A stretch of 64,000 nucleotides of DNA from Euprymna scolopes (Eukaryota): the NCBI GenBank assembly GCA_053919585.1, contig CM132783.1. One strand, given 5' to 3'. Made by a program: the position numbers and the translations under genes. Positions 60,341 through 62,989 of this stretch are shown piece by piece. Every line of letters starts with the position of its first letter. Positions within the stretch are counted from its first letter, which is position 1. The notes under the pieces are model-generated. The model ran no database searches. It was not told the DNA's origin and was given only the letters and a program-made list of their open reading frames with translations.

Positions 60341-61071
60341 ATTTCTTTGGAAAGATAATGGAAGTGTTCCTGAATCTATATGCCTCCACTTCTGTGTGAT
60401 CCATTACAAAGTCAAATAAATCGGATTTTAACATGCTATTTCAGAGAGATTTCCAACATTTCAGCTTTTTCTGAGGAAATGGACAATAAAGAAAAAAAGA
60501 GAGTAATATGGTGTTATGAGCATAGTAAAAAACGGACATGCTAGTGATCTTTATTCAATCTCTAGAAACGTTAGGTTTTCTTGCTAGTATATATAGAAAC
60601 CCTACTTATCAAGTTGAGCATTGCTGTCAATAACACCACCTACTATTATTTAAAATATTTAGAATAATGCAAAGCTCTTAGTAAATGAACAAATGAAGCA
60701 CTGTCTAGTAGCGATCAATATTTATATAAAAACAATGAAATATCATTTACCAGTAACACCTGCGCTGTGATCTAGTAGTTAGAACTGCCGACTAAATGAC
60801 TGTAGGCTCTATCTCTGTATTGGATGGGTGCTAGTCTTGCCACACTGAAGAGATATGATACAACAAAATAGTTTATCTGTAGGAGACTCTCTCTCATATA
60901 TATATATATATATGTTGTTTGTTTTGATTTTAGCGATATGTTTTGAATGAATTCAATTATTTACGAAAGCGCATTTTTACCTAAATGCGAGCTGGGAATA
61001 ATTTTCCCTTTAACCAATTTGGTACCCCCACATGGGGAGCGGTATATATATTATTTTTAAAATGTAATTAT

Positions 61072-61112
61072 CCACCGACACGTGTTTCGTCGTCTACGAC
61101 TCATCAGAGTGG
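61072..61112 (-). ncRNA. Minimal type I hammerhead ribozyme (minus strand)
   Basis: Minus: CCACT-CTGATGA-GTCG-TAGA-CGAC-GAAAC-ACGT-GTC|GGTGG; all core nucleotides intact; predicted cut between 61077 and 61076. Confidence 0.88.
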
Positions 61113-61122
61113 CTGAATATAG

Positions 61123-61161
61123 CACTCTGATGAGTCGTAGACGACGAAACACGTGTCAGTG
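61123..61161 (+). ncRNA. Minimal type I hammerhead ribozyme (plus strand)
   Basis: CACT-CTGATGA-GTCG-TAGA-CGAC-GAAAC-ACGT-GTC|AGTG; stems I, II and III pair; predicted cut after 61157. Confidence 0.9.
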
Positions 61162-61186
61162 GATAATTACATTTTAAAAATTATAT

Positions 61187-61553
61187 TAGTGATGGGACGA
61201 TTCCAATATTTTTCCTGATTTCATACAATTACCGATTCTGATTCTTTACAAATCTCTAAATATTTAACAATAGAGTTTTTTTTCGCTTCCTGTAAAAACA
61301 CATAAAATGTACATATATTTTTGCAGATGTAAAAACATACTTGTGTGTGTGTGGGGGGGCATCTATAGTTTTAATGGTAGTTTAAAATAAATACATATTT
61401 ATTATATCATCATTAGTTATCAACAATGGGAGGCTTTATTTTAAAACAAAATCAAAAGAATCGTTTTGAAATTGGAAAATAAGCAAAATTTTTCCGATTA
61501 CAATACCCCCAAAAGTTCCGATTTTCCAGTTCCAATTAATCGTCCCAACACTT
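61187..61553. mobile_element. hAT-like MITE
   Basis: TIRs TAGTGATGGGACGATT / AATCGTCCCAACACTT; subterminal CCGATT repeats. Confidence 0.65.
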
Positions 61554-61739
61554 TATATATATATTATATAATTAAATAAAAATTATATAATTATATAAAC
61601 AATATAAGGAGACAACACAGATTGATCAACATTTCAACATCTCTACACACATATTGAGCACTTCTGAAAAAAAATATTGGTTTCGAGTTAATATTAACAA
61701 TATAATAAAAACAGGCTTCTTCAGTATTTGACAAACTAT

Positions 61740-62010
61740 GGATACCAACGAAGAGGTGCCTGTGTATGAATTTTTCTGTGGCGGGAGGTGCGCAATCTCC
61801 AACCACTCCTCTCCTGACTCAACATTGTTAAATACCAGTGGCAAGTGAAGTGTCTGTATAGGACGACGGGAAACAAATGTCAAGATAAGTGGAGAGTAGA
61901 TACAACGCCTAGAATTCCCAAATAGTCACCCATCTGGTACTAACCAGGCTCAACATTGCTTAACTTCGGTGATCTGATGAAAACCGATGTGTCAATGCGA
62001 TTTTGCCGTA
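61740..62010 (-). mobile_element. 5S rRNA-derived SINE (SINE3-like) or 5S pseudogene with tail
   Basis: Minus 62010-61902 reads TACGGC...GATCACCGAAGTTAAGCAA...CTGGTTAGTAC...GATGGGTGAC...TGGGAAT...GTTGT, a diverged 5S rRNA, followed by ~160 bp of non-5S body. Confidence 0.75.
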
Positions 62011-62989
62011 TATATATATATATTAAAAATATACTTTAACTTAATATATACACACTCATACATAGAGAGAGAGATGCAGAGTGAAATATATGATTGATGA
62101 TGGACACGCACACATATAAAATATTACACACAAAATCAGTAAAATATATTTTAAAAGATTTGATTTTGATAAACATTTATTCTAGGATGCTAATTCTGTG
62201 GCCCACCTGGAATATAAATTGTGAAGCTTCTATCTAAAAACAGAGAAAGTAATATGCTATGAGTTTAATGAAAAAACACACACACATAATCCTCATTTAA
62301 TCCCGAGCAACGTCGGGTGTTAGTAAAACATAATCCTGAAGTTATGCCATCGATTTTACAAAGAGACTGCATATTTTTCATTAATAGAATGAATCTAGAG
62401 ATTCTCTTGAGATAAGAAAAAAAACATATATATTGGGTAGGATGAGTGGATTTTCCTGAAGAGATCATGACACGTATACGAAGCTGGAACAAACAAATGA
62501 CTTTGCAAATAAAAAAACGAAATGATCAAATACTCTGCATCTCTTTTCCCTTCGTATCATCACGAGCAAACTAATTTTATAGAAGATTGTGGTTTTATTT
62601 TTTCTTCTTTTTTTTAATATACGTCCAAGTTTATATTATAAGGCTATAATAAAATGATGACCTGCGACTCAACTCACAAGGTAGAGACGTGATCACTTCC
62701 ATAAATGCAATAAATAGAAGTTACTGTGCGATATTACTGAATTGATAAAAGTATTACAATTCATTCTCTTTCATCAGCTTCATTATAGTCTTACGTCCAA
62801 ATCATATTGGAAAATTAGTTCTCGTTGGACGATTAATGCTGTAGGATAACCTGGGGTGAAGTGAGCCACCCGGAGTGGTTTTGATGATTATATTATGCAT
62901 AGTTTAGACAATTATCTGATCATCCCATTCCCAAACAAAACTCTGCCAATGTAGAATATTCCAGGTTTGACGGTGTTCGAAAATTGTAT

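What the first reader, a model, noticed from the sequence alone, without database searches (positions are those of the whole stretch)
61053..61181. 129-bp palindrome encoding two intact back-to-back hammerhead ribozymes, one per strand
Seen: arms 61053-61111 and 61123-61181 (59 bp each, one mismatch at 61076/61158) flank an 11-nt spacer in a TA-rich site, with no ORF. Each strand carries a complete minimal type I hammerhead: CUGAUGA, stem II GUCG/CGAC, GAAAC, palindromic ACACGUGU stem III, a GUC cleavage triplet and a 4-5 bp stem I. The single arm mismatch still keeps stem I paired (U-A on plus, U.G on minus). Known: minimal HHRs with palindromic stem III occur in Penelope-like pLTRs and retrozymes and cleave as dimers; ribozymes in both polarities inside a rod are typical of viroid-like RNAs. 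Inference: this is a tiny, young, non-autonomous 'ambisense-ribozyme' mobile element, probably two inverted mini-pLTRs. A read-through transcript of either strand makes the antisense arm first, so it should fold into a hairpin that masks its own ribozyme (self-inhibiting, and a potential Dicer substrate). Transcripts starting in the spacer would leave the ribozyme free.
Basis: partly seen in the sequence, partly recalled or inferred. Interest (0 to 1): 0.9.

Follow-up and report, generated by a model that had tools for sequence, protein, structure and literature searches.

The report
Head-to-head retroelement junction with hammerheads
The 129-bp palindrome is real and each arm carries a complete small hammerhead motif, but it is not a mobile element in itself: it is the junction where two shortened, oppositely oriented copies of an abundant ~305-nt ribozyme-bearing retroelement were laid down together, a known insertion signature of Penelope-like retrotransposons.

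Summary
Observation confirmed. The arms are 61048-61111 and 61123-61186 (64 nt, 97% complementary). Each strand carries a full minimal type I hammerhead core.

Interpretation mostly not supported. The palindrome is not a self-contained 'ambisense' element. It is part of a 273-bp insertion (60914-61186) in a (TA)n tract. That insertion is a 5'-truncated copy on the minus strand (Y 3' part plus the 129-nt X segment) joined head-to-head to a second, inverted 5'-truncated copy of Y.

The parent family has a ~305-nt Y-X unit. The genome holds 3,085 exact copies of the 31-nt ribozyme core. The family shows:
- constant 3' ends and variable 5' truncation;
- copies longer than one unit;
- an inverted 5' arm in 11 of 29 unbiased copies;
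- (TA)n targets.

Inner breakpoints differ between loci, and 18 of 19 palindromes carry X on one side only. So each palindrome was made at insertion, not propagated as a unit.

This matches the published Penelope-like element (PLE) insertion architecture. The genome also holds very abundant young PLEs with the same head-to-head layout. The autonomous partner was not identified.

As RNA the palindrome would fold into a -100 kcal/mol hairpin that masks the ribozyme. The ribozyme is of the dimer-dependent kind.

First-stage notes of this scan flagged similar elements elsewhere in this genome. Verdict: a new member of a known kind, of modest interest.

The parts
60898..60913 (.). (TA)n tract: the target microsatellite on the 3' side of the main copy
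   Evidence: Read directly. The same (TA)n flank is seen in nearly all other copies.
60914..61043 (-). X segment of the parent Y-X unit (reference 176-310), ending at 3'-end site B (..AAACAAC AT..)
   Evidence: At least 1,621 first-look matches in the genome; the best 40 are 98-99% identical. Mapped onto a natural reference unit.
61044..61123 (-). 3' part of Y (reference 96-176) of the main 5'-truncated copy.
   Evidence: maps 60909-61123 as one colinear antisense match at 98% to reference 96-310. Rfam RF00163 gives 27.9 bits.
61123..61186 (+). Inverted 5'-truncated second copy of Y (reference 108-171). Its outer end is at 3'-end site A (..AAAAATTATAT). It holds the plus-strand hammerhead (61121-61163; cleavage after 61157), with helix I cut to 4 bp by the truncation.
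   Evidence: 97% to the reference; 1-nt overlap with the main copy at 61123. Rfam RF00163 gives 26.0 bits.
61553..61570 (.). Continuation of the right-hand (TA)n target tract, separated from the palindrome by a nested 365-bp element with terminal inverted repeats (61188-61552)

Best explanation
The palindrome is a by-product of one retrotransposition event of an abundant, non-coding, ~305-nt hammerhead-bearing retroelement.

The element. The unit is Y (175 nt, carrying the ribozyme about 30 nt before its AU-rich end) plus X (129 nt). It belongs to the Penelope-dependent, non-LTR 'retrozyme' kind.

Shown by sequence comparison:
- The window insertion spans 60914-61186 inside a (TA)n tract.
- It consists of a 5'-truncated minus-strand copy (Y from reference 96, then X) joined head-to-head, 3' ends outward, to an inverted 5'-truncated copy of Y (reference 108-171).
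- Across the family the 3' ends are fixed at two AU-rich sites: A at the Y/X junction and B at the end of X.
- The 5' ends are variable.
- Many copies exceed one unit.
- About 38% of copies carry such an inverted arm.

Inferred mechanism:
- A multimeric or circular Y-X RNA was copied by target-primed reverse transcription at a staggered cut in (TA)n.
- Both DNA strands acted as primers. One started at site B and the other at site A.
- Both cDNAs stopped early within Y. Their ends were then joined by short microhomology (1 nt here). An internal quasi-palindrome at reference 89-104 is a hot spot for this joining.
- The enzyme is most likely a Penelope-like RT/GIY-YIG endonuclease, which is abundant and young in this genome.

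The ribozyme:
- In source transcripts it would act as a dimer between neighbouring units through its palindromic helix III, releasing unit-length RNA.
- Inside this palindrome it is a passenger. Any read-through RNA folds into a ~64-bp hairpin that buries it.
For: Structure of the window copy:
- the conserved X sequence flanks the palindrome on one side only.
- the window copy maps as reference 96-310 (antisense) plus reference 108-171 (sense). 18 of 19 distinct palindromic loci have X on exactly one arm.

Family features (X-anchored, unbiased sample of 29 loci):
- 5' ends range from reference 1 to 219.
- 9 copies are longer than one unit.
- 11 have an inverted 5' arm. In 8 of the 9 whose main copy ends at site B, the arm's outer end lies at site A. 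The main exception is reversed: arm ends at B, main copy at A.

Joints and arms:
- of 27 inversion joints, 16 have 0-8 nt overlap, 5 have filler, and 6 sit on the unit's best quasi-palindrome (reference 89-104, 14 of 16 self-complementary).
- the two arms of a locus are more alike than arms of different loci (0.939 against 0.928; permutation p about 2e-4), with 7 shared private variants. This fits both arms being made from one template at insertion.

Copy number and orientation:
- 3,085 exact cores in the genome against 0 for the control. All 4 close opposite-strand pairs among the first 100 listed are in -/+ (head-to-head) order.

PLE machinery in this genome:
- 14,709 GIY-YIG candidates. Many sit at the C-terminal end of ~806-aa open frames in 2.9-kb tandem or inverted clusters.
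- L073 shows two 5'-truncated copies head-to-head plus full copies, with arms 99.6% identical.

Literature:
- PMC8557442: PLE insertions are 5'-truncated partial tandems, 'often' with an inverted 5'-truncated copy adjacent at the 5' end, and often target (TA)n.
- PMC11167929: a PLE protein cleaves and extends both DNA strands and starts reverse transcription at internal RNA sites.
- PMC4209133: metazoan/PLE hammerheads have a short helix III with a palindromic loop and act as dimers.
- Preprint 10.64898/2026.07.22.740005: animal retrozymes derive from PLE pLTRs.

Folding:
- the homodimer forms an 8-bp intermolecular helix III (-28.5 against -20.2 kcal/mol for two monomers).
Against: - No sequence similarity was found between the Y-X unit and the one abundant PLE family examined. 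Rfam detects no hammerhead in those PLE copies. The autonomous partner is therefore unidentified and PLE dependence rests on architecture alone.
- No RNA-end, circular-junction or cleavage evidence could be obtained. Only assembled contigs were available for the RNA runs.
- Independent short-read contigs break at the repeat, so this particular junction was not verified outside the assembly.
- The ribozyme scores below Rfam's gathering threshold everywhere: at most 33.2 bits against 34.
- The within-locus excess of arm similarity is small.
Confidence: 0.8

Rival explanations
1. One reading: the ~130-140-bp palindrome is itself a small non-autonomous mobile element (MITE-like, or a pair of mini-pLTRs that moves as a unit) carrying a ribozyme on each strand.
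For: More than 40 loci match the whole palindrome at 84-96%. All sit in TA-rich sites.
Against: - Inner junctions differ between loci. Arms break at reference 85-113, and some break inside CUGAUGA (L013, L020, L027).
- 18 of 19 loci have the 129-nt X on one side only.
- The 'loop' is always just the overhang of the longer arm.
- The parts X and 5' Y are 97-99% identical between copies, while whole palindromes are only 84-96%.
- No defined target-site duplication is seen.
Confidence: 0.04
2. Same by-product origin, but the enzyme is a LINE rather than a Penelope-like element. The inversion would then arise by classical L1-type twin priming of a SINE-like RNA.
For: - Twin priming is known to give 5' inversions with microhomology (own knowledge of L1 biology).
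- No similarity to the examined PLE was found.
- An A-box-like motif in Y hints at a SINE-type Pol III head.
Against: - There is no poly(A) or LINE-type tail.
- The two arms duplicate the same part of Y instead of adjacent parts.
- Partial tandems longer than one unit are frequent (9 of 29) and inverted arms very frequent (11 of 29).
- The targets are (TA)n, and the hammerhead with a palindromic helix III is a PLE hallmark (PMC8557442, PMC4209133).
- PLEs with the same architecture are abundant and young here.
Confidence: 0.1
3. Assembly fold-back artefact at this locus.
For: Independent short-read contigs do not span the junction.
Against: - The same architecture occurs at dozens of loci with different unique flanks.
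- Inverted ('opposite strands') joints of the family occur in contigs of independent runs.
- The unique flanks are confirmed in a 2019 run.
- The two arms differ at two positions, which a fold-back chimera of one molecule would not show.
Confidence: 0.02
4. The hairpin is a domesticated small-RNA (miRNA, siRNA or piRNA precursor) gene.
For: - A near-perfect 64-bp hairpin of -100 kcal/mol.
- Sub-threshold hits to miRNA hairpin models.
- Family sequences are abundant in RNA libraries.
Against: - The miRNA hits are generic hairpin matches far below gathering scores (for example 33 against 51, and 35 against 245).
- The junction is not conserved between loci.
- No small-RNA data are available.
- The arms decay like neutral DNA: 15 of 59 arm instances lack a complete core motif and 26 of 59 are not fully intact once the stems are counted.
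Confidence: 0.04

Closest known systems
Penelope-like element (PLE) insertion architecture: pLTR partial tandems with an adjacent inverted 5'-truncated copy (Craig et al. 2021, PMC8557442; Frangieh et al. 2024, PMC11167929)
   Same: - 5' truncation.
- Partial tandems longer than one unit.
- An inverted 5'-truncated copy at the 5' side with 3' ends outward.
- (TA)n/AT-rich targets.
- Fixed internal start sites for reverse transcription.
- A hammerhead in the repeated terminal part.
- The same layout is seen in this genome's own 806-aa PLEs (L073).
   Different: - The element is only ~305 nt and non-coding.
- No sequence similarity to the PLE family examined.
- Two alternative 3'-end sites are used asymmetrically by the two arms.
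Metazoan non-LTR retrozymes (Cervera & de la Pena 2020, PMC7229834; Li, Clavereau & Pollet 2026 preprint)
   Same: - A short (170-400 nt), non-coding unit bearing a type I hammerhead.
- Copies longer than one unit, implying a multimeric or circular RNA template.
- Co-occurrence with PLEs.
   Different: - Long tandem arrays and circular RNAs were not shown here.
- Most copies are dispersed, 5'-truncated and often inverted.
- The hammerhead has no recognisable loop-loop tertiary contacts and looks dimer-dependent.
Minimal/dimeric PLE hammerheads (Cervera & de la Pena 2014, PMC4209133)
   Same: - A complete core with G10.1-C11.1.
- A 2-bp helix III with a palindromic 4-nt loop.
- A predicted 8-bp intermolecular helix III in a dimer.
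   Different: - Helix II is the canonical 4 bp rather than the long bulged helix II described for many PLE min-HHRs.
- Activity is untested.
L1 twin-priming inversions
   Same: Two cDNAs primed from the two strands of one target, joined head-to-head with microhomology.
   Different: Here both arms copy the same segment of the template, which needs a multimer, a circle or two RNAs. The frequency is much higher, and the 3' ends are at internal AU-rich sites rather than poly(A).
MITEs
   Same: Short, palindromic, AT-rich insertion sites, thousands of copies.
   Different: No fixed internal sequence, no defined TIR/TSD unit, and a one-sided attached X. The pattern of truncation is RNA-mediated.

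Membership tests
Hammerhead ribozyme, type I (Rfam RF00163) | Conserved core: C3U4G5A6N7G8A9, G12A13A14, A15.1-U16.1, H17 cleavage nucleotide, G10.1-C11.1 | tested here: met
   Both arms carry CUGAUGA / GUCG-UAGA-CGAC / GAAA / C-ACGU-G / UC.
Hammerhead ribozyme, type I (Rfam RF00163) | Three helices around the core, open at helix I | tested here: met
   Helix I is 4 bp (plus) or 5 bp (minus), helix II 4 bp, helix III 2 bp plus a 4-nt palindromic loop. Helix III is too weak for a stable monomer fold (-3.5 and -6.7 kcal/mol, and not the minimum-free-energy structure).
Hammerhead ribozyme, type I (Rfam RF00163) | Score at or above the curated gathering threshold (34 bits) | tested here: not met
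   26.0 and 27.9 bits in the window. The best family copy scores 33.2. None reached gathering in 40 loci.
Hammerhead ribozyme, type I (Rfam RF00163) | Self-cleavage | not testable with these tools
   RNA data were contigs only, with no end information.
PLE-type (Penelope-dependent) non-autonomous retroelement / non-LTR retrozyme | Variable 5' truncation with fixed 3' ends | tested here: met
   5' ends range from reference 1 to 219. 3' ends lie at reference ~176 or ~310.
PLE-type (Penelope-dependent) non-autonomous retroelement / non-LTR retrozyme | Partial tandem (pLTR-like) copies longer than one unit | tested here: met
   9 of 29 X-anchored copies span 347-515 nt of a 305-nt unit.
PLE-type (Penelope-dependent) non-autonomous retroelement / non-LTR retrozyme | Inverted 5'-truncated copy adjacent at the 5' end | tested here: met
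   The window copy, and 11 of 29 unbiased copies.
PLE-type (Penelope-dependent) non-autonomous retroelement / non-LTR retrozyme | AT-rich / (TA)n target preference | tested here: met
   (TA)n flanks in the window and in nearly all loci printed.
PLE-type (Penelope-dependent) non-autonomous retroelement / non-LTR retrozyme | Sequence similarity of the terminal part to an autonomous PLE's pLTR or 3' end | tested here: not met
   No BLAST match (word size 7, E up to 0.01) to 14 PLE loci of the most abundant family. Other PLE families were not examined.
PLE-type (Penelope-dependent) non-autonomous retroelement / non-LTR retrozyme | Unit-length circular RNA or long tandem arrays | not testable with these tools
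   Contigs only.
tRNA-derived SINE | tRNA-related head with A and B boxes | tested here: inconclusive
   ARAGORN finds no tRNA and Rfam gives no tRNA hit even at E up to 10 on 116 nt. The A-box match has 2 mismatches and the B-box has 3. There is an 8-bp acceptor-like stem but no cloverleaf, and a weak resemblance to a B2-SINE-derived model.
MITE | Fixed unit bounded by TIRs and a target-site duplication, propagated as a whole | tested here: not met
   Variable inner junctions and a one-sided X.

The most novel reading that the evidence does not exclude
The Y-X family may be a natural record, thousands of events deep, of how Penelope-type enzymes integrate. In this reading both strands of a (TA)n cut prime cDNA synthesis at two discrete internal RNA sites: site A for the inverted arm and site B for the main copy. 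The two cDNAs are then joined preferentially at a quasi-palindrome. This would be in vivo support for the dual-strand priming so far seen only in vitro. The resulting perfect hairpins could also feed small-RNA silencing of the family. A further possibility is that the element is driven by a tRNA-like Pol III head, which would make it a Penelope-dependent SINE.
Probability: 0.25. Interest if true: 0.55.

Novelty: new member of a known kind. Interest (0 to 1): 0.3.

Why it matters
The finding turns a seemingly exotic 'double ribozyme palindrome' into an ordinary and explainable structure.

It documents a young, abundant family (at least 3,000 intact ribozyme cores) of short hammerhead-bearing retroelements in a large genome, probably a mollusc's. 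Such short elements are poorly annotated in these genomes.

Three features are useful raw material for working out the still unclear integration mechanism of Penelope-like elements:
- the asymmetric use of two 3'-end sites by the two arms;
- the junction hot spot at an internal quasi-palindrome;
- the high rate of inverted arms.

The case also warns annotators that such junctions mimic miRNA hairpins and 'ambisense' ribozymes.

Tried and rejected
- tRNA head of Y: ARAGORN and Rfam give no tRNA. Box matching is weak. Left as inconclusive.
- Autonomous partner: GIY-YIG loci were fetched. The abundant 806-aa PLE shows no BLAST similarity to Y-X and no Rfam hammerhead. Only a degenerate hammerhead-like stretch is seen at the ORF start. 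Partner not found.
- RNA evidence: four RNA-library runs hold the family's sequences at high summed depth. They are assembled contigs without strand or end information, so nothing can be said on cleavage or circles.
- Independent DNA: the unique flanks are confirmed, but contigs break at the repeat and raw reads were sampled at about 2%, so the junction itself is unverified. One weak contig joint (60852 to 61187, 22-nt side) was not interpretable.
- Compensatory covariation in the helices: none seen. The family is too young and variation is mostly single-arm point changes.
- The viroid-like 'both polarities in a rod' analogy was rejected, because the two ribozymes are the same sequence duplicated in inverted DNA copies.

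Full report
**Observation**

The sequence is as described.
- The repeat finder gives arms 61048-61111 and 61123-61186: 64 nt, 97% complementary, 11 nt apart.
- The 31-nt hammerhead core occurs once on each strand, at 61127-61157 (+) and 61077-61107 (-). None is expected by chance.
- At a permissive threshold Rfam's Hammerhead_1 model aligns end to end on both strands (27.9 and 26.0 bits), below the gathering score of 34. The default gathering scan of the whole window finds only a 5S rRNA copy at 61897-62013.
- All core nucleotides, G10.1-C11.1, a 4-bp helix II, a 2-bp helix III capped by the palindromic loop ACGU, a GUC triplet and a 4-5-bp helix I are present.
- In raw DNA reads of the species, 136 of 157 reads covering 61076 carry the other base. 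The G on the minus strand is therefore a minority variant of the family.

**What the palindrome belongs to**

The genome is 5.9 Gb. A search with the palindrome gave 1,253 first-look candidates, and about 40 scored loci cover all of it at 84-96% identity. Printing 30 of them showed three things.
- The outer ends of the arms are constant (..GGATAATTACATTTTAAAAATAAT followed by (AT)n).
- The inner ends break at different points in each locus. Some arms are cut inside CUGAUGA (L013, L020, L027).
- A further conserved sequence (X, window 60914-61043) adjoins one side only.

X alone has at least 1,621 candidates, and the best 40 are 98-99% identical. Loci anchored on X reveal the parent unit:
- Y, 175 nt, starts CATTTAAG. 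It contains a stretch with an acceptor-like stem, then the hammerhead, then an AU-rich end.
- X, 129 nt, follows Y.
- Y and X alternate (Y-X-Y..) in loci such as L035, L049 and L053.

The 5' part of Y has at least 2,081 candidates at 97-99% identity. The exact 31-nt core occurs 3,085 times in the genome, against 0 for the reversed control.

**Anatomy of the window copy**

I mapped all fetched loci onto one natural reference unit (from L045; Y = 1-175, X = 176-304).
- Window 60909-61123 is one colinear antisense match to reference 96-310 at 98%.
- Window 61123-61186 is a sense match to reference 108-171 at 97%.
- The insertion is therefore 60914-61186. It is a 5'-truncated minus-strand copy (Y from 96, then X) joined with a 1-nt overlap to an inverted, 5'-truncated copy of Y, with 3' ends outward.
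- (TA)n lies to the left (60898-60913). It also lies to the right, where it is interrupted by a nested 365-bp element with terminal inverted repeats (61188-61552) and resumes at 61553.

**Family rules**

- 18 of the 19 distinct palindromic loci carry X on exactly one arm.
- In the X-anchored sample of 29 loci, which is unbiased with respect to the palindrome:
  - 5' ends range from reference 1 to 219;
  - nine copies span 347-515 nt of the 305-nt unit;
  - eleven carry an inverted arm at the 5' side.
- 3' ends fall at two AU-rich sites: A (reference ~176, the Y/X junction) and B (reference ~310, the end of X). When the main copy ends at B, the inverted arm nearly always ends at A. In L049 the roles are reversed.
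- Of 27 inversion joints, 16 have 0-8 nt of overlap, 5 have a few filler bases, and 6 sit on the unit's strongest quasi-palindrome (reference 89-104).
- The two arms of a locus are slightly but significantly more alike than arms of different loci (0.939 against 0.928; permutation p about 2e-4). They share 7 private variants, against 64 single-arm changes. This fits both arms being made from one template at insertion and then decaying independently.
- Of 59 arm instances, 44 keep a complete core and 33 also keep helices I and II. No compensatory changes are seen.

**Mechanism**

The pattern is constant 3' ends, variable 5' ends, copies longer than a unit, frequent inverted 5' arms and (TA)n targets.
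- This is what Craig et al. describe for Penelope-like elements. [quoted passage not shown]
- Frangieh et al. showed in vitro that a PLE protein cleaves and extends both strands of the target. It starts reverse transcription at internal sites of the RNA (PMC11167929).
- I infer that a multimeric or circular Y-X RNA was copied from both strands of one (TA)n cut, at site B on one strand and site A on the other. The two short cDNAs were then joined by microhomology.

The genome holds the machinery.
- PF01541 (GIY-YIG) gives 14,709 candidates. Many sit at the C-terminal end of ~806-aa open frames spaced 2.9 kb apart, in tandem and inverted clusters.
- L073 shows two 5'-truncated copies head-to-head, each followed by a full copy, with arms 99.6% identical.
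- That PLE family shares no detectable sequence with Y-X and has no Rfam-detectable hammerhead. The partner therefore remains unidentified, and PLE dependence is an inference from architecture.

**The ribozyme**

- As a monomer the hammerhead fold is weak (-3.5 and -6.7 kcal/mol) and is not the minimum-free-energy structure.
- Two copies cofold into the classic dimer with an 8-bp intermolecular helix III (-28.5 against -20.2 kcal/mol for two monomers).
- This is the behaviour described for metazoan and PLE hammerheads with short palindromic helix III (PMC4209133).
- It fits a role in cutting multimeric source transcripts to unit length, as proposed for non-LTR retrozymes (PMC7229834; preprint 10.64898/2026.07.22.740005).
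- In the palindrome a read-through RNA of either strand would form a hairpin of -100 to -104 kcal/mol.

**Expression and independent data**

- Contigs of four RNA-library runs, two of them poly(A)/oligo-dT and labelled mollusc or invertebrate, contain family sequences at high summed depth. They include inverted joints at other positions.
- Contigs give no strand, end or circle information, and DNA carry-over cannot be excluded.
- A 2019 DNA run of the same species confirms the unique flanks but breaks at the repeat.
46 or more large scaffolds, 5.9 Gb and the mollusc labels suggest a decapodiform cephalopod, but this is only an inference.
- Cephalopod genomes are known to hold Penelope expansions, and Rfam hammerhead hits have been reported in one (PMC8967140, PMC6962438). 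I found no description of this family.

**tRNA-like head**

- First-stage notes on other parts of this genome speak of tRNA-headed hammerhead elements, some 'inserted as tail-outward inverted pairs'.
- For this family, ARAGORN and Rfam find no tRNA.
- There is an A-box-like match with 2 mismatches, a B-box-like match with 3, and an 8-bp acceptor-like stem.
- I leave this point as inconclusive.

**Verdict**

- The 'ambisense-ribozyme mobile element' reading is not supported. The side guess of two inverted pLTR-like pieces is essentially right.
- The structure is the head-to-head junction made when a short hammerhead-bearing retroelement was inserted in the Penelope manner.
- It is a new member of a known kind and of modest interest. 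Its main value is as data on the PLE integration mechanism.

Noticed in passing
window 61897-62013 (-); L018:1211-1329; L020 about 1440-1500; L046 about 1290-1400: A 5S rRNA copy (76.8 bits) abuts a (TA)n tract about 700 nt from the insertion. 5S-related sequence, one full copy and two partial, also lies within about 1 kb of three other family copies. This suggests dispersed 5S retro-copies or 5S-derived elements that use the same (TA)n targets.
   Followed up: partly
window 61188-61552: A 365-bp element with 15-17-nt terminal inverted repeats (AGTGATGGGACGATT..) is nested in the (TA)n tract right of the palindrome. Its left part (61186-61281) is highly repeated in DNA and RNA runs. It is probably a MITE.
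   Followed up: partly
L073 (G000:C12:14495600-14505500) and L074 (G000:C13:17110000-17119900): A very abundant, young Penelope-like element family: 14,709 GIY-YIG candidates, ~806-aa open frames and 2.9-kb units. Copies are arranged as full and 5'-truncated copies in tandem and head-to-head, with inverted arms 99.6% identical over 4.3 kb.
   Followed up: partly
L073:7040-7090: At the start of the PLE open frame there is a degenerate hammerhead-like stretch (CUUGAAGA, a 5-6-bp hairpin, then GAAAC). Rfam does not detect it. It recalls the published case where a PLE ORF starts inside its hammerhead.
   Followed up: no
L040:1748-1780; L053:1162-1324: Two atypical joints. In L040 the outer end of the inverted arm is at reference 87, neither site A nor site B. 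L053 has a head-to-head joint at the very 5' start of Y plus a further inverted piece. These hint at additional start sites or nested events.
   Followed up: no
window 60852/61187: One contig of a 2019 DNA run joins 60852 to 61187, skipping 334 nt, with only 22 nt on the shorter side. It is too weak to call an empty-site allele.
   Followed up: no
window 1-64000: No open reading frame of 180 aa or more on either strand in the whole 64-kb window.
   Followed up: no
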